The notes under the pieces: model-generated
Database searches by the model: none
The model's input: the letters and a program-made list of their open reading frames with translations, nothing else
What the model was told of the DNA's origin: nothing
Virus record (IMG/VR): IMGVR_UViG_3300035698_022190
Location: 1-64,000 of that record
Direction: 5' to 3' (one strand)
Length of the DNA stretch: 64,000 nt
In this document: piece by piece, positions 1 through 51,534 of the stretch
Layout: every line of letters starts with the position of its first letter
Numbering within the stretch: position 1 is the stretch's first letter
Translations under genes and position numbers: made by a program

Positions 1-870
1 CAGGAACATCGGGTACAGATGGGACATCAGGAACATCGGGAACATCCGCTACAAATGGAACATCGGGAACGTCTGGAACATCCGGAACATCCGCCACAGA
101 CGGAACATCCGCCACAGATGGAACATCAGGAACAGCCGGAACATCCGCCACAGACGGAACATCAGGAACAGCCGGAACATCTGGAACATCGGGTTTAGAT
201 GGAGAAGTGGCAGCACAAGGTCTCCCCGGAACGAACGGAACATCTGGAACATCGGGAACATCGGGAACATCCGCTACAGACGGAACGTCGGGAACATCAG
301 GAACATCCGGAACATCCGCCACAGACGGAACATCAGGAACATCGGGAACATCCGCTACAGATGGGACATCAGGAACATCAGGAACATCCGCTACAGACGG
401 AACATCTGGAACATCGGGAACATCCGGAACATCAGGAACGTCCGCCACAGATGGAACATCGGGAACATCGGGAACATCGGGAACATCCGCCACAGACGGA
501 ACTTCGGGAACATCTGGAACATCAGGAACATCGGGAACATCCGCTACAGACGGAACATCGGGAACATCGGGAACAGACGGAACATCAGGAACATCTGGAA
601 CATCGGGAACTTCGGGAACGTCTGGAACATCCGGAACATCAGGAACGTCCGCCACAGACGGAACAAATGGATCTTCAGGATCATCGGGAACATCAGGAAC
701 ATCTGGAACATCTGGAACATCCGCCACAGATGGAACAAATGGATCATCAGGATCATCTGGAACATCAGGAACGTCTGGAACATCTGGAACATCTGGAACA
801 TCCGCCACAGATGGAACAAATGGATCATCAGGATCTTCAGGATCATCCGCCACAGACGGAACATCGGGAG
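1..870 (+). repeat. Coding 9-nt tandem repeat (GGAACATCN) encoding Gly-Thr-Ser
   Basis: Visible directly; variation falls mainly at wobble positions, so the repeat is coding. Confidence 0.9.
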
Positions 871-1199
871 TTGATATTACCGAGGAGTATACTACTGTTA
901 ACCCAAGTGTAGGAGTAGTAACTTTAAATTTTAATAATGGTCCAAACTTTAAATCATTAATGTCTGGAGTAGTAACTATTAATCCATCAAACGAGGCAAC
1001 CAATTTAGGTAAAAGTGGAAATTTAATAATAACAGGAGATACGGGAGGTATAACTTCTATTACATTAAATGCTGAGTTTAAAACACCTTTAGGTCAAACA
1101 CCTTCATGAGTATTAACACAAGGTGCAATATCTATATTAACATATATAGTAGTAGATGCTTCAACAATTCTAGTTAATTACATGGGTAATTTTAGCTAA
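3..1199 (+). CDS. Collagen-like (Gly-Thr-Ser)n fibre/decoration protein, 5'-partial; one TGA read as Trp
   Basis: Frame 3 is open from the window start with GTS/ATD triplets. Reading TGA 1107-1109 as Trp completes the C-terminal domain ([40 protein letters not shown]) to TAA 1197-1199, which overlaps the next ATG (TAATG). Confidence 0.8.
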
Positions 1200-1843
1200 T
1201 GCAACGTTTTGGTTTTATTCAAAAATATGAGTGAGAAACGAGCTTTAGTACTGATATACAAACTAGTACGACGTCATTATTAAACACTACGACTACTTGA
1301 GAAACTAGTCGCTCTACAACTACTACATATCAAACATCTCATAGCACAACAACGGCTTATGATACAAGCATATCCACGACGACTACGTGACAAACATCTC
1401 ATAGCACTACCACATCATACAATACAGACACGAGTACGACGACTACGTGGGGAACATCTCATAGCACTACCACATCATATAATACAGACACGAGTACAAC
1501 AACTACGTGACAAACATCTCATAGCACTACCACATCATATAATACAGACACGAGTACAACAACTACGTGAGAAACGTCTCGAAGCACAACTACAACTTGA
1601 AATACTAATGTTTCAACGATAACAGTACGAGCGACTCTTAGATCAACGCAAGAGCCAGCTAATACAACAGTGGAAACAAGCAGTAGTTATAATACATATT
1701 GGAATACAACAAGTACCAAAAATACACAAAGAGAAACAAGCACTTATACAGAATATGAGACTGAATGAACAACATACTGAAATACCACAGTTCAAACAAA
1801 TACTGTAATATTTTGAACTAAAGGATCAGGGATAACACAATAA
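1199..1843 (+). CDS. Thr/Ser-rich repeat virion protein 1 (214 aa, 9 TGA=Trp)
   Basis: [16 protein letters not shown]..., with 20-aa repeat STTTTWQTSHSTTTSYNTDT. TAATG coupling at both ends. One repeat copy has TGG (1448) where the others have TGA (1388, 1508, 1568). Confidence 0.8.
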
Positions 1844-8571: not shown

Positions 8572-10598
8572 TTAGTGAACCCATTCTCTAGCAATTGCTG
8601 GGTCTACTTCCATAGGTACAGAAGGGGCATAGTGATTGAAAGCACCAACCATGGCGGTCTTTACATGCTCTGCAACTTCTTCAGCTTCATCTTTATGTAC
8701 TTCCACTAGTATTTCATCATGAATCGCATTAATGATTTTAGCATCATATTTTTCTTTATCAAAAAGTCTTTTTAATCGACACATAGCTAATTTAGTAGTA
8801 CTAGCACCACATCCTTGGAAAGGAAGGTTCTTCGCAATATTAAATGCGTGTGCAACCTGTCTGGAGTCATCCCAATCAAAAGTTGTTAAGTCCCGACGAC
8901 GACCATCTAATGGTGATAAAGCATATTTATTTCTAGCAGCATCTGTTGTTAGCCCGTCTAAAGTCTTTTTAATATAAGTAAATGTTGCGAAATATTTATT
9001 CATTAAATTACGTGCTTCCTTTATTTCAATACCTAAATTTAAAGATAATTTCATAGGACCAATACCATATATTAATCCAAAGGTTAGAGACTTGGCGGGT
9101 GTTCTATACTTCTTTTTCATATCATCTTTTAATTTTCCTTTATCATCAAAAAATGTGTCATAAGGAATATTATAAATTAAGCTAGCTGAATAGCTATGGA
9201 GATCCATATTGTTTTGTAGAGCATATAAAAACTTAGGCTCTTGTGTTAAATGTGCTAATAATCTTAGTTCTTGCAGTTAATTCTCAGTTTTCACTGAGGA
9301 CTGGACTCTCTCTTCACCCAATAGGGTGCGCCGTATATAGTCTCTACACTTGCCCGGAAAAATACTTTCCTGCTAGCTCGGGATTGCCATATCAAGTGAC
9401 TTAGGTTTCCCCGAATTAGCGGCGTTTTCACTTATAAATTTCTTTATAAGGGAGCCTTGCAAAAATCTTTCATGCTTTCTTTCAAGAAAGTCAAGAAAAA
9501 TCTTTTATGTTGACCCGAAAAGTCTGCTGAGATTATTCTGTAATTTGGATCTTGTGCAATAAATGCTGCACGATATTCTGCTGCTGCGGGAATGTTTGTC
9601 ATATTAGGATTTCGGGAAGCATATCTTCCTGAGTCTGCTCCAAGCTGTACAAAGTTGGAGTGAACGCGTCCATCAATAGTTGAAACATTTTGCTCTAAAA
9701 ACTCTTTTCCATACGTAGTAATTTTCTTTTGTTGGCCTCTGTACTCAAGCAAAGCTTCCACTGCTGGATGTTTTACTTTTTTTAAAGCAGCTTCACTGGT
9801 CGATGTTAAACGCGTACGGGTTAAATCATTTAAAATTGGCAACAATTGTTTAGGTGAGTTATAGTTTATATCTAAATTACCAAACAAATCTTTTTGACAA
9901 AATTTTTCAAAGAATTTGTCCAACTTAGTTTTTGCTATATCTGCCTGTTTAACAGCAATATCTTTTAAAGCAAGCCAGCTGTCCCTATCTAAAAATATAC
10001 CATTTATTTCCATATCAGCCGTTACCTTAGTAGTTTCATATTCTAAAGTAGACAGTTCTTTCATTCCTCGTGCATTTAAAAGTTTTTGGATTTTTTTATA
10101 AATTGGTATTAAATATTGAACATCGTCTCCGGCATATTCTAGCTGGCGTTCAGTAAATTCTTGGCCCCACTTCATTCCAACAAAAGTGGTTTGTTGTGTT
10201 TTATCTAAAGCGTGTCCTAAATACTTTAAAGCAACAGAGTTAAAACTAGCACTTTGTTTTTTACCTTGATTTAGTAACTGCTCTCCAATCATAGTGCACT
10301 TTACTGATGGTAAATCATACCCAAAATTTGTTTTTATCATTCCATAATCAAATTTTGCATTGTGTATTACACAAGTGACATCTTTGTCAACAATCCAATC
10401 TAGCACTTTATAGATATGAGTACCTAGCCTATAAACATCAAAAACAAACTGTTCTTTTTCATCTCCTATTTGCAATAATAAAACTTTTGCTTCTAGGGGA
10501 TCAAGACCCGTTGTTTCCGTATCTAAAGCGACCATAGGCTGTCGACGCAAATAAGTTAAGGCTGCATCTAAGTCACTTTCTGATTTTATATATAACAT
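8572..10598 (-). CDS. polA: Family A DNA polymerase with 3'-5' exonuclease; join(10598..9513, 9273..8572), 595 aa
   Basis: ExoI LDTETTG, HNAKFD, YAGDD; motif A restored as ADFSG|QELR after splicing; motif B KSLTFGLIYG; motif C IHDE. Confidence 0.9.
9274..9512 (-). ncRNA. Group I self-splicing intron (239 nt, no ORF) in polymerase motif A
   Basis: 5' exon ends in U and intron ends in G. P AATTCGGGGAAA, Q AATCCCGAGC, R GAGACTA, S AAGAGAGAGTCC. Stems: P2 CTTATAAA-GAAA-TTTATAAG, P3 CGCCG/CGGCG, P8 CACCC/GGGTG, P9 CTCAGT-GAAA-ACTGAG. Confidence 0.9.
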
Positions 10599-12175: not shown

Positions 12176-12205
12176 AAAAAGGGTCAATCATAAGACTGGC
12201 CCTTT
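12176..12205 (-). terminator. Intrinsic terminator downstream of the holin
   Basis: AAAGGGCCAGTC-TTAT-GATTGACCCTTTTT on the - strand. Confidence 0.7.
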
Positions 12206-12229
12206 AAATAAACGTTTATTTAAGTAATA

Positions 12230-12466
12230 CTATCGGTTTTCGTAATAGCGTGTTACACCATCAACAATTCCTTGCCCGCCTATATAAGCGACGCCAATAG
12301 CTACTAATCCGGTCACAACAATATCTAGTTTGTCGGCAGGCATTTTAGAAAATCCAATTGATGTTATAACTGCAATTTCAAGTAGAACAGTTCAAAACTT
12401 GGTTCTAAGTAGCTTGCTCTTCAGTACTTCCTTGACTGTGTCCGGGGTCTTTGATTTTTCTGCCAT
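12230..12466 (-). CDS. Putative holin (78 aa, 2 TM; Trp25 encoded by TGA)
   Basis: MAEKSKTPDTVKEVLKSKLLRTKF(TGA)TVLLEIAVITSIGFSKMPADKLDIVVTGLVAIGVAYIGGQGIVDGVTRYYENR*. KFW and AYIxGQGxxD holin-like motifs; followed by a terminator. Confidence 0.7.
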
Positions 12467-12728
12467 CTTTATTTGTATATACTTTTTCACCTTTCGGCCC
12501 AAGTACATATCCTGGGTAATTATCTTTTTTTAATTGATCACACACAAAACATGTTTTATAAACCCTGTTTTGACTACACTTTTCTGGGTTATGCCAATTA
12601 TGAAAAGTCCAATCAAACTCATCGTCCGAAACATCCATATCTGATTGTGTGCTCCAAATTTCATTAAAGTCCACACTCTGTGCTTTAGGTTTTGTGTCGT
12701 GAATACCTAATTTATCTTTTATATCCAT
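12405..12728 (-). CDS. Hypothetical protein with possible His/Cys metal site
   Basis: 107-aa ORF with H..C..CxxC; its 3' end overlaps the holin start by 62 nt. Confidence 0.5.
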   Translation of the reverse strand: MDIKDKLGIHDTKPKAQSVDFNEIWSTQSDMDVSDDEFDWTFHNWHNPEKCSQNRVYKTCFVCDQLKKDNYPGYVLGPKGEKVYTNKDGRKIKDPGHSQGSTEEQAT

Positions 12729-12760
12729 ACAATTGTACGGTTATCCTATGTCTTTATCCA

Positions 12761-12937
12761 TTACCGAAACCAGCCTTTATGTGTAAACCACGCATAAAAG
12801 CTAAAGCTTCCCGCAGCCACTAAAGATAGATAGGTTAAAGTCTCGGAATTATAATGATCCCCGATTCCGCCTATTATACTAGTGCATACAACTGCTACTA
12901 TGAATCCCATAGTCAGTGTTTTTTTATTTATCTTCAT
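12761..12937 (-). CDS. Small 2-TM membrane protein (58 aa)
   Basis: MKINKKTLTMGFIVAVVCTSIIGGIG...LSLVAAGSFSFYAWFTHKGWFR*; directly behind a promoter. Confidence 0.6.
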   Translation of the reverse strand: MKINKKTLTMGFIVAVVCTSIIGGIGDHYNSETLTYLSLVAAGSFSFYAWFTHKGWFR

Positions 12938-12942
12938 AGTTT

Positions 12943-12971
12943 AATATAACAAATTTTAACGAAAATTACAA
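12943..12971 (-). promoter_or_regulatory. Promoter TTGTAA-N17-TATATT, probably leaderless
   Basis: ATG 12937 lies 5 nt after the -10 box. Confidence 0.5.
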
Positions 12972-13559
12972 TTAAAATTTATGTATAAATGTTGGCGGAT
13001 TCACCTCCCCACGGAGCCAGTTTAATATATATTGAGAACCAATACAGCCAATAATTTTATTACCGTTCTGTACTATACCAGCTTGCTTTTCATATTCGAG
13101 CTGACAACTACCGTCTTTTACATCTTTAGGTATTGTCAACATCATAGCTTCGAGAGTATTATTTTTATTTTTAGTAAAGGCTGCAATAGCGCGCCCCTCA
13201 GAACGAAGGTCTATCCAATAAAAATCGTTTTTTTCTGCGGTTTCAAATAATAATTTTCTAAACTTTGTATTATCTACCGCACATACAACACAGTCATATC
13301 CATCTAATTCTTTTGCTTTTGTAACGCGTTCTGTTTTTCCTGTAAAACCATACCTAGCTGAAATCGATTCAGCTTTTTCATCAGTGACATCTTCCATACC
13401 AAAATTTTGATATGAGAGGTTATCCATGTCCACAGTGTCATCATCTACAAAAGTAATAAAAGCGTCGTTTAATTGGCTATGTTCATTTAAATCATATAAA
13501 TGAAATGCTAACCATGAGCCAATTCCGCCTGCCCCAACAACTAAAATATTCTTAGTCAT
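12972..13559 (-). CDS. ThiF/E1-family ubiquitin-like-protein adenylating enzyme
   Basis: ILVVGAGGIGS, VDDDTVDMDNLSYQNF, KAE, CAVDN..R, YWID motifs; candidate catalytic Cys in GSCQ. Confidence 0.85.
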   Translation of the reverse strand: MTKNILVVGAGGIGSWLAFHLYDLNEHSQLNDAFITFVDDDTVDMDNLSYQNFGMEDVTDEKAESISARYGFTGKTERVTKAKELDGYDCVVCAVDNTKFRKLLFETAEKNDFYWIDLRSEGRAIAAFTKNKNNTLEAMMLTIPKDVKDGSCQLEYEKQAGIVQNGNKIIGCIGSQYILNWLRGEVNPPTFIHKF

Positions 13560-14030
13560 CTAATCTCCTATTAAATTTATTTGTGAAGGTTCAAAACTTC
13601 TATTTATTCCATCATAAAAAAAAACGTTTGTTTTCTTTTCTAGTAATGAAAAGATGGGATAAAATCCAGCGTATCCCGCGCCGTATATATCTGTTACAGA
13701 AGGTTGCGCAATATGGTTTGGATGTGTATGAAAGATGCCAATAAAATCTTTTTTTGCACCTTTATTCATTAATGTAGTCTGTTTTAATACTTGAAAAAAC
13801 TCGTTTGGATCTGGCACATAGTGAACTTCTGTTTTTAAATTTTGTGTTCCTATAAGCTTTTTCTCAAAGTTTTGTCCTGCTACATTTGTCATACTAATAA
13901 ACTCATTACATTCAGAGTTTTTATCATCTGTTTTTAAACCGAGCAAAGCCCCAACCACTTCATGACCAGGACTTGTTTCGCCATATTTATGCATCTCTGT
14001 CCATACAGATTTCTGCATATTTAAAATCAT
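13560..14030 (-). CDS. JAB/MPN+ (JAMM) metallo-isopeptidase
   Basis: Catalytic Glu in HEVVGALLG and JAMM motif HTHPNHIAQPSVTD (HxHx7Sx2D). Confidence 0.85.
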   Translation of the reverse strand: MILNMQKSVWTEMHKYGETSPGHEVVGALLGLKTDDKNSECNEFISMTNVAGQNFEKKLIGTQNLKTEVHYVPDPNEFFQVLKQTTLMNKGAKKDFIGIFHTHPNHIAQPSVTDIYGAGYAGFYPIFSLLEKKTNVFFYDGINRSFEPSQINLIGD

Positions 14031-14031
14031 T

Positions 14032-14838
14032 TTATGCTTGTGCCGTTGAGCCTGGTGTAAATGTAAATCTACACAGCGGGTTTAAACCTAATTCTTTACA
14101 AATTGCATTTTCTGATTTTCTACCGAAACGCATTTTAAAATTGTTTACAACCCAAGCTCTACTTGCATTTACAAGGCGATTGGCACCTAAAACATCTTTT
14201 GAGTTTGGTCCATATATTGCGTATATTAAGCCATTAGATACCCATAAGTCACGCGCAGCATTATCCATAGTTTTATGGCTAGCCTGCTCCATTAAAATAC
14301 CAGGAGTATTTTGCCGCATTGGCCAGAGTTCACCCAATACGGGCAATGCTATGTGCACTAAGTGTGTCTCATTAGTACCAGTTGGGTGATCATTATCTAC
14401 ACGCCCATAAATACCTTTGTGTCTTTTATAATAATTATGTATTTGTACGTTAGTTTTAGAAATACCTAACGTAGCCAAGTGCGCAGAAATATTAACCCAA
14501 CTTAATCCTTTATTTTCAACTAAATCGCATATGTATTCAAAAGGCGTTGTGGGAAGAACCGTAGCGCCCCAGCCTAAATTATGCCAGGTGACTTTTTCTT
14601 CTTTTAATCGTTTACCTAATTTGTGAACAGTAATCCCTAATTTTTCTGCCAATTCTTTTTGCGTTATTTTATTTCCAACGGTGCCTGCAGTAAAAGTAGC
14701 AGTTTGTTTTTTACCAAAAATAACTGTTGCATCTTTTGTCATATGACCCTTTCTTAAAACTTCGCCCAGAACTCTGGAAAATTTTGGTATGCGGGGCAAT
14801 TTCGCGGTTGTCATGTTTGCTTTTGTCTCTTTCTTCAC
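14032..14838 (-). CDS. Basic hypothetical protein with HTH-like segments
   Basis: GTG start with AGGA RBS; TQKELAEKLGIT is HTH-like. Confidence 0.5.
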   Translation of the reverse strand: MKKETKANMTTAKLPRIPKFSRVLGEVLRKGHMTKDATVIFGKKQTATFTAGTVGNKITQKELAEKLGITVHKLGKRLKEEKVTWHNLGWGATVLPTTPFEYICDLVENKGLSWVNISAHLATLGISKTNVQIHNYYKRHKGIYGRVDNDHPTGTNETHLVHIALPVLGELWPMRQNTPGILMEQASHKTMDNAARDLWVSNGLIYAIYGPNSKDVLGANRLVNASRAWVVNNFKMRFGRKSENAICKELGLNPLCRFTFTPGSTAQA

Positions 14839-14861: not shown

Positions 14862-14888
14862 AAAATGGGGGCAAGTTACCCTGCCCCC
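14862..14888 (-). terminator. Intrinsic terminator after the ubiquitin-like gene
   Basis: GGGGGCAGG-GTAA-CTTGCCCCC-ATTTT on the - strand. Confidence 0.65.
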
Positions 14889-48468: not shown

Positions 48469-48477
48469 GGTAGACTT

Positions 48478-51400
48478 ATGCTAGATATAAAAAACTTTAT
48501 TATAGAACAAATAAAAACCACCAATCCAAACGCTGATGTTAGAACAGGATCAGTTTTTAAGGACTTAGTGCTAAACCCCCTTAGCTCAATTTTAGCGGGA
48601 TACCAACAAGAGCATGAAAGTTTCTTACAAAGAGAGGCCGTTACAAATCTTACAGAACTGGCTTCATCCGAACTAGACTCTGTTGCTTCTAACTTCTTGA
48701 TTACAAGAAACGAAGGATCCTACTCTGTTGGTGAAGTTAAAATTTATTTTAGCGATCCAAGAGCAATTTCATTTCCAGCTGGGACAATTTTTACTACAAA
48801 CACTGGTTTAGAATATCAGACTTTAGCAACATTTACCTTAAGTAAATTTCAAATGGAACAAAATGTTGTTGATTTTCCTAACTATGATACAGGATCTATT
48901 GCTTTAAGAGCAATGTTACCTGGCATAAAGCACAACATCCCAGAAGGAACTATTTTAACTTTTTCTAGTAGTGTAAATTTATCTCCAGTAAGAATAACGG
49001 CTGTCTCTGGATTTACTGGTGGAACTGCTCATGAAGACAATGATTCCTTATTTAGACGTTTAAAAGATACAGTTCACAACAAATCACTTGCAAGTGCCTA
49101 TGCTATAAAAGCTAAAATTGTTGATAACTACGATGACGTAAAAAACGTTAAGGTCGTTGGTTCTGGACACCCACTAATGATTAGAGATTTAACGACAATG
49201 GTTTCAGATATAGCAAGTTATAAATCAGAAGATTTTTATCTTGTATACTCAGGGCAACATTCAGAGCTTTATGATAAAAGTCATGAAGCATATCTAAATT
49301 TCTTTAATGACCCGCTACCAGGAATTCTACCAACTATGCCGGCCGTATCAGGATGATTATCAGAACTAACAACTGCGCAGTATCAAAGTGTATATAAATC
49401 TACTGATGCTTATTACTTAGAAGAAAATAACCAAGCCCTTATTCATGAATCTTTTGCAGAATTGATTGATCCGGACAACCCACAAGCAGCTTTACAGCTT
49501 ATTATTGATAATAATAAGTGGTATGTAAGTGATGGCGCTAATCCAACAAATGAAGTTTTTTATATTGATGAAATTAATGTAGAGGGCGGAAAACTAAGAT
49601 TAGGAAAATATCTAGATCCGGATGCTGAAGATAAACTGCTACATTTACCTTACTCAGAGATGGCTCTTTTAAATGATTTAGCTACCTCTAGATTACCTGG
49701 AACGACCGAGCGACTTGAGCTAGCTATTTCGGGAATGACTTCTACAGAACAATATAATAATACTGCACCAATATTTCATCGTGAGCTTTCAGAGCACACA
49801 GGAATTCAAATAACTTTTAATTTTGAAACAACTGATGATACTGTAAATGGTGAGATGGCATATGCCACTGTATTTAGAAATTCAAATTTTTATCAGCCAC
49901 AGGATGGTTATGGTGTTGCCTTTAGAAAACAGCCAGACTATTTAATTCGTATGGCTGCCGAAACACACACAGCCGCTGATATTGCCACCTTTACCGAACA
50001 GTACGGAGTGGCTCCTACCAAATTTGGTGCAGCTTTATTAGCAGATAACACACTATGAAAATATAATGTTTATTTAGTTGATAACGATGTACTTCAAGAA
50101 GAAATTTGGGTGGGCGGAGAACAACTTTGAGATCAAACATCTGGGAAGAACCAATTCATTGTTGCTGGAAAAGCATGGATAGAAAACGATGTAACTTATA
50201 ATGTAAAAATGAATATATATAGTACTATGGCTACTGAAGTATGACTATATGAAGTAGGACAAGCGCAAGGCTCCGCTATTATTAGTCGTGGCGCAACTGA
50301 TCCGAGATATGTTCCAATTGCTAATGAAGATATAGATGCAATAAATGGTGTAATTACTCAACGAAATCATTTTGGATTGGCTGTGGCTCAAACACGTAAC
50401 AATGAGTGGTATTTTGACGATTTAAATATTACAAGTTTTGCCTCTAAATCTCCAAAACATTTATTTAGAATCAATGTTGCAGATACAGAAATAGCGGCTG
50501 ATGACGACTTTGAAGTCAATTATTATGGAGCTGGATATGATCCAGTCTTATATTTAGCGGACGGAAATACCGGCCATAGCAAGACACTTGCACAAGTATG
50601 AAATGAAAATAGCAGCGCATGGGAAGATATAGGTACACATACTTATACAATTGCGGATTCAAAAGCAAACCAGTTAATTACAGATCAATTTACTCCATTA
50701 AGTAACTATACAGACGCAGGTGGTTTTTTAAATATTGCGGCCTTGGCACATAACTTTGGAGCAGCTTTTCCTAGTGACACGCAACACGGATTAAGAACCC
50801 ACTATGTTGAAGTAAATAATATAACCCCAGACACAGTACATCGTGGTAATGCAATGGACATATATGTTCAAGACCCAGATAATATAATAAAAGGGTCTAC
50901 AGCACAGGTAATGACTTCTAATACCTTGTTAGTACACAATATGCCAAGCATTCCAGGGTTTATCCAAGAGATACTTGAAGTGCGGGAGGGCATTTCTAAA
51001 GTAGCTTATGATGCATCGACATATTCAATTACGAATTTAGCAGACGGAGATAGCTACTCAGCAGATCAACAATATTCTATTGCTTTTGCTTCTGGTGATA
51101 TGACCGGGACTTTAATTGAAGTTGTTTATAGATATTGAAGCAACGGTGTTGCTGTGGCAACCTTATTAACGCAAGATGATGTGCGCTTCCCATTAGCCGA
51201 TAATAAAGTTAAAGTAATGGCCCCAACAATTATGAATATTACTAGCTTAATTTATTCAGGCGGATTACCAGCTGCCGAAATGAAGACATCTATTGCTACA
51301 TATTTGAACGGGTTAACAACAACCCAATTTGATAAGTCTGATCTTATTAATCATATGTATGACCAAGGTGCTAATTATGTAGATACTGATATTAAAATCA

Positions 51401-51534
51401 CTATCAGAGAATACGATACAGAGGCGACAAAGACTACTCGTAAAATGACGGATAGTCGATATACACTTCGTACAGATGTTGTAAGTCACTTCTACACTAA
51501 CGAAGATGAACTTTCAGGAGTTGTACAAATATAA
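48478..51534 (+). CDS. Baseplate J/gp47-like wedge protein (1018 aa, 6 TGA=Trp)
   Basis: GSVFKDL, LDSVASNF.ITR, FPAGT.F and FTGG..HEDNDSL..R motifs; five listed fragments in one frame with no TAA/TAG until 51532. Confidence 0.8.

What the first reader, a model, noticed from the sequence alone, without database searches (positions are those of the whole stretch)
12230..12466. Hidden holin is the only TGA-recoded gene seen in the early block: a translational lysis timer
Seen: a 78-aa two-TM ORF absent from the ORF track. Its TGA (12392-12394) falls at the W of a KFW motif just before the first TM helix; it also has AYIGGQGIVD and its own terminator. In code 11 only a 24-aa soluble peptide is made. 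Inference: the holin shares the strand and region of the early genes but cannot be made full-length until TGA suppression starts, which would prevent premature lysis.
Basis: partly seen in the sequence, partly recalled or inferred. Interest (0 to 1): 0.75.

Follow-up and report, generated by a model that had tools for sequence, protein, structure and literature searches.

The report
TGA-interrupted small phage membrane protein
A real, conserved 78-codon gene for a two-helix membrane protein sits among the early genes of a 210-kb phage and can be read in full only once the phage reads TGA as tryptophan, but nothing shows it is the holin.

Summary
On the minus strand, 12466..12230 is a 78-codon frame with one in-frame TGA (12394..12392, codon 25), two hydrophobic helices and a TAG stop.

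It is a real gene. Six related phage lineages keep the frame, with many synonymous changes on both sides of the TGA. Five carry exactly one TGA: four at this codon and one 11 codons later, with Ala at the first site. One lineage has no TGA (Phe there) and its own Shine-Dalgarno site.

The phage does read TGA as Trp in plus-strand structural genes and carries a tRNA(UCA). The 35 ORFs of 80 aa or more in the surrounding minus-strand replication block have 111 TGG and no TGA, as sense or as stop. A translational gate is therefore plausible, and it is an idea already published for recoded phages.

"Holin" is not supported:
- No holin family matches.
- The gene is missing from two sister lineages, one of them shown to be recoded.
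- Trp is not conserved at the site.
- The lysis cassette lies about 53 kb away and has no TGA in its spanin, amidase or 116-aa ORF. It holds an Rz-like spanin, the suppressor tRNA, an Amidase_2 endolysin and a 116-aa single-helix protein.

Verdict: a new member of a known kind, and an accessory membrane protein of unknown function.

The parts
12230..12466 (-). 78-codon gene for a small two-helix membrane protein. It starts at ATG 12466 and stops at TAG 12232..12230.
   Evidence: Translation is. The frame is conserved in six lineages. Its codon-usage score of 0.339 per codon equals the real-gene mean of 0.348, against -0.25 for off-frames.
12392..12394 (-). In-frame TGA at codon 25, read as Trp under the phage's late code.
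   Evidence: TGA aligns with TGA or TGG in late-gene orthologues. Independent contigs carry the same base.
12395..12466 (-). Lys-rich N-terminal 24 codons. Codons 1-20 overlap the tail of the upstream 107-aa gene in another frame.
   Evidence: The length and the KL..(R/T/S)K(F/L) motif are kept in this frame, while the upstream gene's tail varies in length and sequence. The ATG coincides with the conserved KDG codons of the upstream gene. No clear Shine-Dalgarno site is present.
12344..12391 (-). First hydrophobic helix (TVLLEIAVITSIGFSK), with no start codon between the TGA and Met42.
   Evidence: Between window and L010 this stretch has 7 synonymous and 4 non-synonymous codon differences. 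The codon score is 0.371. Met42 is Leu in L012, L015 and L023.
12233..12343 (-). Loop, second Gly-rich hydrophobic helix (LDIVVTGLVAIGVAYIGGQGIV) and short C-terminal tail. This is the 37-aa fragment that code-11 gene callers report.
12176..12206 (-). Intrinsic terminator that closes the six-gene operon 14838..12230.
   Evidence: Fold energy is -14.6 kcal/mol with z -4.6. The hairpin is conserved with compensating changes in L010, L002 and L006, and is present whether or not the gene is.
12405..12728 (-). Upstream 107-aa gene of unknown function. Its tail overlaps the start of the membrane-protein gene.
   Evidence: Homologues P0003-P0008 are 71-77% identical. Where the membrane gene is absent, this protein ends straight after the KDGRKIK motif.
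12761..12937 (-). Second accessory 58-aa two-helix membrane protein in the same operon, free of TGA.
   Evidence: It is present in the window, L002 and L015 lineages only.

Best explanation
This is a genuine accessory gene for a small N-in/C-in two-helix membrane protein. It is the last cistron of a six-gene operon on the replication (early or middle) strand of a 210-kb marine or salt-lake phage. The operon runs HTH protein, JAB, ThiF-like protein, 58-aa membrane protein, 107-aa protein, then this gene.

The phage reads TGA as Trp in its plus-strand structural genes and carries a tRNA with anticodon UCA inside its lysis cassette. This cistron holds one TGA ahead of its first helix. Under the host's standard code, ribosomes starting at 12466 release a 24-aa peptide. 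The full-length membrane protein is made only when the suppressor is present, so it is translated like a late protein although it is transcribed with TGA-free neighbours.

Shown: the gene is real, TGA means Trp in this clade, the suppressor tRNA gene exists, and the TGA is unique on this strand.

Inferred: the timing of suppressor expression, and that the gate is adaptive. The protein's job is unknown. A membrane-active role harmful if made early is the best guess, such as a holin or lysis-timing factor or a late exclusion factor. It is not shown to be the holin.
For: The ORF and its TGA are in the sequence.

Comparative evidence:
- Six lineages keep a gap-free 55-residue core.
- Five carry exactly one TGA, at two different columns. 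All true stops are TAA or TAG.
- In L002 the N-terminal part and helix 1 run through the window's TGA position with a sense codon. The window runs through L002's TGA position. The two halves therefore form one reading frame.
- The juxtamembrane (R/T/S)K(F/L) motif just upstream of the TGA is kept in all six lineages, including L023, where it lies inside an ORF that has a Shine-Dalgarno site.
- Codon usage is gene-like on both sides of the TGA.

Recoding evidence:
- The ORF 56629-64398 has 2,589 codons with 32 TGA and no TAA or TAG.
- Orthologue alignments run through TGAs. TGA pairs with TGA 30 times and with TGG 35 times. The remaining pairings are scattered over many residues.
- The tRNA(UCA) lies at genome 65786-65883.

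The minus-strand block has 111 TGG, no TGA and no TGA stops. The block encodes polA, a sigma factor, class II RNR and a dNMP kinase. The concept is precedented in Borges et al..
Against: - There are no expression data, and no RNA run was shown to hold the sequence.
- The start codon has no clear Shine-Dalgarno site and lies 60 nt inside the upstream gene. In the overlap, codon usage favours the upstream frame (0.58 against 0.16).
- One lineage (L023) has no TGA, so the TGA is not essential to the family.
- Keeping TGA rather than TGG in four lineages is not significant against the late-gene rate of TGA/TGG exchange.
- The suppressor must already be active for the structural genes, so the gate can only separate early from late. 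It cannot set the moment of lysis.
- UGA is a leaky stop, so some host-driven read-through cannot be excluded.
Confidence: 0.7

Rival explanations
1. It is the phage's holin. The TGA would keep it from being made until the suppressor is on, which would prevent premature lysis.
For: - It is small, with two helices and an N-in/C-in topology like class II holins, and its second helix is Gly-rich.
- The amidase has no signal or SAR sequence, so a hole-forming holin is needed somewhere.
- No holin family was recognised in the lysis cassette.
- The suppressor tRNA sits inside that cassette.
- TGA-rich membrane proteins in lysis cassettes are reported for Agate phages.
Against: - No holin family hit is significant, either for the pieces or for the intact homologue P0015.
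- A profile search of 1.84 billion proteins finds only this clade.
- The gene is absent from two sister lineages that keep every flanking gene. One of them is shown to be TGA-recoded.
- It lies about 53 kb from the endolysin, and the 116-aa single-helix protein with a charged tail at 67587-67937 is better placed.
- The C-terminal tail is only 10 residues with net charge 0.
- At least 21 other small membrane ORFs exist in the genome.
Confidence: 0.15
2. It is an accessory membrane protein unrelated to lysis, such as a superinfection-exclusion or host-takeover factor of the T4 Imm type. On this reading the TGA is a neutral Trp codon in a gene that happens to be translated when suppression is available.
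For: - Its presence is patchy among equally related phages.
- It sits like an inserted accessory gene (a 'moron'), between a gene and a conserved terminator.
- A second accessory membrane gene lies next to it.
- The L023 form has no TGA.
- The persistence of TGA is not statistically distinguishable from late-gene drift.
Against: - It has the only TGA among roughly 9,000 codons of this block, next to cistrons on the same mRNA that use TGG.
- Two different TGA positions have arisen in the family, and the family has no TGG at all.
Confidence: 0.3
3. The real product is the 37-aa single-helix peptide from the internal ATG at 12343, or the locus is a decaying pseudogene. On this reading the TGA is a true stop.
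For: Code-11 gene callers report the 37-aa ORF. Met42 is present in the window, L010 and L002.
Against: - Met42 is Leu in L012, L015 and L023.
- No start codon follows the TGA in the window or in L010.
- The helix-1 stretch between the TGA and Met42 shows substitutions biased toward synonymous changes and gene-like codon usage.
- L002 and L023 read straight through the window's TGA position.
Confidence: 0.05

Closest known systems
Stop-codon-recoded late and lysis genes of code-4 phages (Borges et al., bioRxiv 10.1101/2021.08.26.457843)
   Same: The phage infects a standard-code host and carries a suppressor tRNA next to its lysis cassette. Its replication genes are in standard code and its structural genes carry in-frame TGA read as Trp. 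That paper also proposes that in-frame stops block early or accidental translation. It reports a TGA-rich transmembrane protein in Agate lysis cassettes and a recoded homing endonuclease placed inside an early gene.
   Different: Here the recoded cistron is a small membrane protein inside an otherwise TGA-free replication-strand operon, far from the lysis cassette. The cassette's spanin, amidase and 116-aa ORF carry no TGA. The phage comes from marine or salt-lake samples, not from guts. The suppressor tRNA has a long variable arm.
Class II holins, such as the phage 21 S pinholin (Pfam PF04971) and T7 gp17.5
   Same: They are about 70 residues long with two helices and an N-in/C-in topology, and they have Gly-, Ala- and Ser-rich helices. 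This comparison rests on my own knowledge of these families.
   Different: No sequence match was found. The atlas similarity to PF04971 scores 0.70, which is noise level. The charge layout is inverted, with a long basic N-terminus and a short neutral C-terminus. The gene is not next to an endolysin and is not conserved among sister phages.
T4 Imm-type small early membrane proteins (superinfection immunity)
   Same: These are small two-helix accessory membrane proteins encoded among early genes. This comparison rests on my own knowledge, and no homology was tested.
   Different: Imm is made early. This gene's TGA should delay or limit its translation. No sequence relationship is known.

Membership tests
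Holin (functional class) | Small protein with at least one transmembrane helix | tested here: met
   The protein has 78 residues and two hydrophobic segments. The model of the homologue is a helical hairpin with pLDDT 85.
Holin (functional class) | Sequence membership of a described holin family | tested here: not met
   Pfam, PHROGs and NCBIfam give no hit at E<0.1 for the pieces or for P0015, apart from phrog_9987 at E 0.11-0.16, which P0015 does not reproduce.
Holin (functional class) | Encoded in or next to the lysis cassette | tested here: not met
   The Amidase_2 endolysin lies at genome 65901-66503 and the Rz-like spanin at 64793-65554, about 53 kb away on the other strand.
Holin (functional class) | Highly charged hydrophilic C-terminal tail | tested here: inconclusive
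   The tail DGVTRYYENR has 10 residues and net charge 0. The charged domain is at the N-terminus instead.
Holin (functional class) | Retained in close relatives, as expected for an essential lysis gene | tested here: not met
   The gene is absent from the L006/L007 and L013/L014 lineages, which keep the flanking genes and the terminator. Only parts of those genomes were available.
Holin (functional class) | Forms membrane holes and releases endolysin | not testable with these tools
   This needs expression with the amidase.
Recoded (code 4) late-type phage gene | The phage reads TGA as Trp in other genes | tested here: met
   Orthologue alignments run through TGAs. TGA pairs with TGA 30 times and with TGG 35 times. 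One 2,589-codon ORF holds 32 TGA.
Recoded (code 4) late-type phage gene | The phage carries a suppressor tRNA(UCA) | tested here: met
   ARAGORN finds the tRNA at 65786-65883 with anticodon UCA. Its acceptor stem (A1-U72, G73) resembles that of the phage's tRNA-Trp. The Rfam score is below the family's gathering score.
Recoded (code 4) late-type phage gene | The in-frame TGA has conserved coding sequence on both sides | tested here: met
   
Recoded (code 4) late-type phage gene | Full-length product appears only after suppressor expression | not testable with these tools
   No RNA or proteome data are available.

The most novel reading that the evidence does not exclude
Selection keeps one opal codon in this membrane protein as a single-cistron translational gate. 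When the first TGA was lost (Ala in L002), a new one arose 11 codons downstream. One cistron of an early-strand operon would then be switched on by a suppressor tRNA that is co-transcribed with the lysis cassette, tying a membrane-active (possibly holin-like) protein to the code switch.
Probability: 0.25. Interest if true: 0.7.

Novelty: new member of a known kind. Interest (0 to 1): 0.42.

Why it matters
This is a clean natural case where one operon mixes code-neutral cistrons with a single cistron that can only be read in full after the phage changes the cell's genetic code. The hypothesis that recoding works as a translational timer can therefore be tested on a 78-codon gene with two alleles (TGA and TGG) and one tRNA. 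It also shows that standard-code gene calling hides small membrane proteins in recoded phages. The case extends recoding of this kind to marine and salt-lake jumbo phages.

Tried and rejected
Searches that found no further relatives:
- Word-index protein search with the 53-aa piece: only the window's own 37-aa fragment.
- tblastn and blastn against GenBank phages: nothing for the gene or the region.
- IMG/VR scans: nothing.
- JGI metagenome scans: only another copy of the L002 type.
- Profile search of 1.84 billion representatives: one new homologue, P0015.

Searches that gave no functional lead:
- ESM Atlas: noise-level scores.
- BFVD fold search: no hit below E=1.
- Paralogue search in the phage's own genome: none.
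- Searching the relatives' records through the genome search: those records are not held.

Readings considered and rejected:
- Selenocysteine or serine at TGA was suggested by the tRNA's Sec-like long variable arm. I rejected it because TGA exchanges with TGG in orthologues.
- A +1 frameshift fusion with the upstream 107-aa protein has no conserved slippery site, and L023 has an independent start.
- A second minus-strand gene with a supposed in-frame TGA (151476-152159) is a lipoprotein whose TGA lies upstream of its start.

PF00959 and PF01464 lysozyme families are absent from the genome.

Full report
**1. What is in the sequence**

The feature lies on the minus strand. The reverse complement of 12466..12230 reads as 78 codons:

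MAEKSKTPDTVKEVLKSKLLRTKF-TGA-TVLLEIAVITSIGFSKMPADKLDIVVTGLVAIGVAYIGGQGIVDGVTRYYENR-TAG.

- The TGA is at 12394..12392.
- The mechanical ORF list shows only a 38-aa fragment before the TGA and a 37-aa fragment from the internal ATG at 12343.
- The ATG at 12466 lies 60 nt inside the upstream 107-aa gene (12728..12405), in another frame.
- Downstream, a hairpin followed by a T-run at about 12206..12176 folds at -14.6 kcal/mol (z -4.6). A good AGGAG site for the metallophosphoesterase gene follows it.
- An independent ENA contig is identical over 926 nt.
- Logan contigs from two further salt-lake runs cover the TGA with no differences. The TGA is therefore not an assembly error.

**2. The genome and its code**

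The window is the first 64 kb of a single 210,208-bp phage contig. CheckV rates it 100% complete.

Reading TGA as sense fuses the plus-strand ORFs from 37 kb onward into long frames. One frame, 56629-64398, has 2,589 codons with 32 TGA and no TAA or TAG. One piece of this block matches a baseplate wedge family.

I aligned these frames, with X at each TGA, to orthologues from three related contigs (L017, L018, L020):
- The alignments run straight through the TGAs. For example, 48469-51531 is 76% identical to L017 over 1,022 residues.
- TGA pairs with TGA 30 times and with TGG 35 times.
- The remaining pairings are scattered over many residues.

So TGA is Trp in this clade.

The genome carries 25 ordinary tRNAs, a predicted tmRNA, and one tRNA with anticodon UCA at 65786-65883.
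- This tRNA has a long variable arm and scores best as tRNA-Sec, at 32.5 bits against a gathering score of 47.
- Its acceptor stem (A1-U72, G73) resembles that of the phage's own tRNA-Trp.

**3. The surrounding block avoids TGA entirely**

In 7808-36374 (minus strand):
- The 35 ORFs of 80 aa or more contain 8,971 codons, with 111 TGG and no in-frame TGA.
- All 34 ORFs of 90 aa or more end in TAA (26) or TAG (8).

The block encodes a split DNA polymerase A, a sigma-70-family factor, a metallophosphoesterase, a class II ribonucleotide reductase, a dNMP kinase, and JAB and ThiF-like proteins. It is a replication and nucleotide-metabolism block.

Genome-wide, in-frame TGAs with coding-like sequence on both sides are confined to plus-strand genes. 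The one apparent minus-strand exception has its TGA upstream of a lipoprotein start. The anomaly is real: 1 TGA and 0 TGG here, against 0 TGA and 111 TGG in the block.

**4. Is it a gene?**

The gene has no homologues in cultured phages or by word search. The upstream 107-aa gene, however, has relatives at 71-77% identity, and their contigs are syntenic. A profile search of 1.84 billion proteins added one more homologue, P0015 on locus L023.

Six lineages carry the gene. The 55-residue core aligns without gaps:

| Lineage | Core sequence (X = TGA) |
|---|---|
| window | FXTVLLEIAVITSIGFSKMPADKLDIVV... |
| L010 | LXVVLLETAVITSIAFTKMPSDKLDIVV... |
| L012 | LXIVMLEIGIITGLGFTGLKADILDIVV... |
| L015 | FXIVMIEIGIITGLSFAGLKADILDIIV... 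|
| L002 | FAIVILGFALIAXLGFTSMVTPRLDIVV... |
| L023 | FFVALLALGLIIGISFTGLATARLDLAI... |

Every X is TGA, and every true stop is TAA or TAG.

Four points establish one continuous reading frame:
- **Mutual read-through.** L002 and L023 read through the window's TGA position with sense codons (Ala, Phe). The window reads through L002's TGA position (Ser).
- **No alternative start.** No start codon follows the TGA in the window or in L010. The internal Met42 is Leu in three lineages.
- **Substitution pattern.** Between window and L010, the stretch from the TGA to Met42 has 7 synonymous and 4 non-synonymous codon differences. The rest of the gene has 15 and 3.
- **Conserved upstream motif.** The basic motif just upstream of the TGA, (R/T/S)K(F/L), is kept in all six lineages. 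In L023 it lies inside an ORF with its own AGGAG site.

Codon usage in this frame scores 0.339 per codon. The mean for real genes is 0.348 and for off-frames -0.25. The stretch between the TGA and Met42 scores 0.371.

The N-terminal 20 codons are dual-coding. There the upstream gene's frame has the better codon score (0.58 against 0.16). Across lineages, though, the upstream protein's tail varies in length and sequence, while this frame keeps its length and pattern.

The start codon coincides with conserved KDG codons of the upstream gene and has no clear Shine-Dalgarno site. Initiation is therefore the weakest link in the gene model.

**5. What kind of protein is it?**

- It has two hydrophobic segments.
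- AlphaFold models the TGA-free homologue as a helical hairpin, with helices at residues 2-18 and 24-56 and pLDDT 85.
- With the Lys-rich N-terminus inside the cell, the topology is N-in/C-in.
- No Pfam, PHROG or NCBIfam family matches. The only holin hit, phrog_9987 at E 0.11-0.16, is not reproduced by the intact homologue.
- The atlas search and the BFVD fold search are at noise level.
- There is no paralogue in the genome.

**6. Evidence bearing on "holin"**

The genome has a recognisable lysis cassette elsewhere, on the plus strand:

| Genome coordinates | Feature | Evidence |
|---|---|---|
| 64793-65554 | Rz-like i-spanin: N-terminal helix plus coiled coil | phrog_739, E 1.5e-4 |
| 65597-65782 | 61-aa ORF | |
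| 65786-65883 | tRNA(UCA) | |
| 65901-66503 | Amidase_2 endolysin with no signal or SAR sequence | PF01510, E 3.7e-16 |
| 67587-67937 | 116-aa ORF, two genes downstream of the amidase, with one helix and a long charged tail | |

The spanin, the amidase and the 116-aa ORF carry no TGA. The intervening 360-aa ORF (66503-67585) has one. The 116-aa protein is the better positional candidate for the holin.

The gene studied here is about 53 kb away, on the other strand. It is also accessory:
- Two lineages (L006/L007 and L013/L014) keep JAB, the ThiF-like gene, the upstream gene, the terminator and the metallophosphoesterase gene, but lack it. There the upstream protein ends straight after its KDGRKIK motif.
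- These lineages are no more distant from the window than those that carry the gene.
- The L007 contig is itself TGA-recoded.
- At least 21 other small membrane ORFs exist in the genome.

Trp is not conserved at the site.

**7. The gate**

The mechanism follows from what is shown. The cistron shares an operon, bounded by terminators near 14888..14867 and 12206..12176, with five TGA-free cistrons whose Trp codons are all TGG. It alone needs TGA decoding.

What is not shown is when the tRNA(UCA) is made. It sits inside the plus-strand lysis cassette with no obvious promoter of its own, which suggests late expression.

Is the TGA kept by selection?
- In late genes TGA and TGG exchange freely. Four lineages sharing TGA is therefore not significant.
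- The relocated TGA in L002 and the complete absence of TGG in the family are suggestive only.
- L023 manages without any TGA.
- The structural genes need the suppressor well before lysis. The gate could separate early from late, but it could not time lysis itself.

**8. Relation to what is known**

Borges et al. (bioRxiv 10.1101/2021.08.26.457843) already proposed that recoded stops block premature translation of late and lysis genes. They also described:
- a TGA-rich transmembrane protein in Agate lysis cassettes;
- a recoded homing endonuclease inside an early gene, expected to be made only late.

The present case is a further instance in a different environment, marine and salt lake. It has a tidy single-cistron arrangement, but it is not a new principle.

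**9. Verdict**

- **Observation:** confirmed.
- **Interpretation:** partly supported. The recoded membrane protein is real and the gate is plausible, but the holin identity is unsupported and several expected holin features fail.
- **Novelty:** new member of a known kind.
- **Interest:** moderate.

Noticed in passing
window 8575-10598 (minus strand): The DNA polymerase A gene is split at motif A into two ORFs: 10598..9447 (exonuclease plus pol profile 25-161) and 9276..8575 (pol profile 163-380). A spacer of about 170 nt separates them. Relatives L002 and L023 have one 595-aa gene, and L006 has a LAGLIDADG ORF after the break. This looks like an intron or a remnant of a homing element.
   Followed up: partly
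genome 65786-65883 (L016:1786-1883), outside the window: The opal-suppressor tRNA(UCA) has a long variable arm and scores best as tRNA-Sec (32.5 bits, below the gathering score). Yet TGA behaves as Trp in orthologue alignments. The tRNA sits between an Rz-like spanin and the Amidase_2 endolysin, neither of which contains a TGA.
   Followed up: partly
window 12761-12937 (minus strand): A second accessory 58-aa two-helix membrane protein lies in the same operon and has no TGA. It is present only in the window, L002 and L015 lineages and has no family match.
   Followed up: partly
window 12975-14030 (minus strand): A JAB/MPN peptidase and a short ThiF/E1-like protein lie side by side, after an HTH protein, at the head of the operon that ends with the membrane gene. 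The pair is kept in all relatives. Its role in the phage is unknown.
   Followed up: no
window 207-1843 (plus strand): A Gly-Thr-Ser collagen-like repeat protein (207-1199) is followed by a Thr/Ser-rich ORF (1199-1843) with repeats of about 17 residues. Most repeats carry a TGA (one a TGG), giving 9 TGA in 214 codons.
   Followed up: no
genome 80-185 kb (minus strand), outside the window: Nineteen minus-strand ORFs end in TGA, with a TAA or TAG 0-41 codons later. Some early or middle genes therefore still seem to use TGA as a stop with a backup stop. The block 7808-36374 avoids TGA altogether.
   Followed up: no
window 12233-12391 compared with L010: The membrane protein core is more conserved between the window and L010 (87%) than the flanking genes are (64-75%). 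This hints at strong constraint or at recent exchange of this small module.
   Followed up: no
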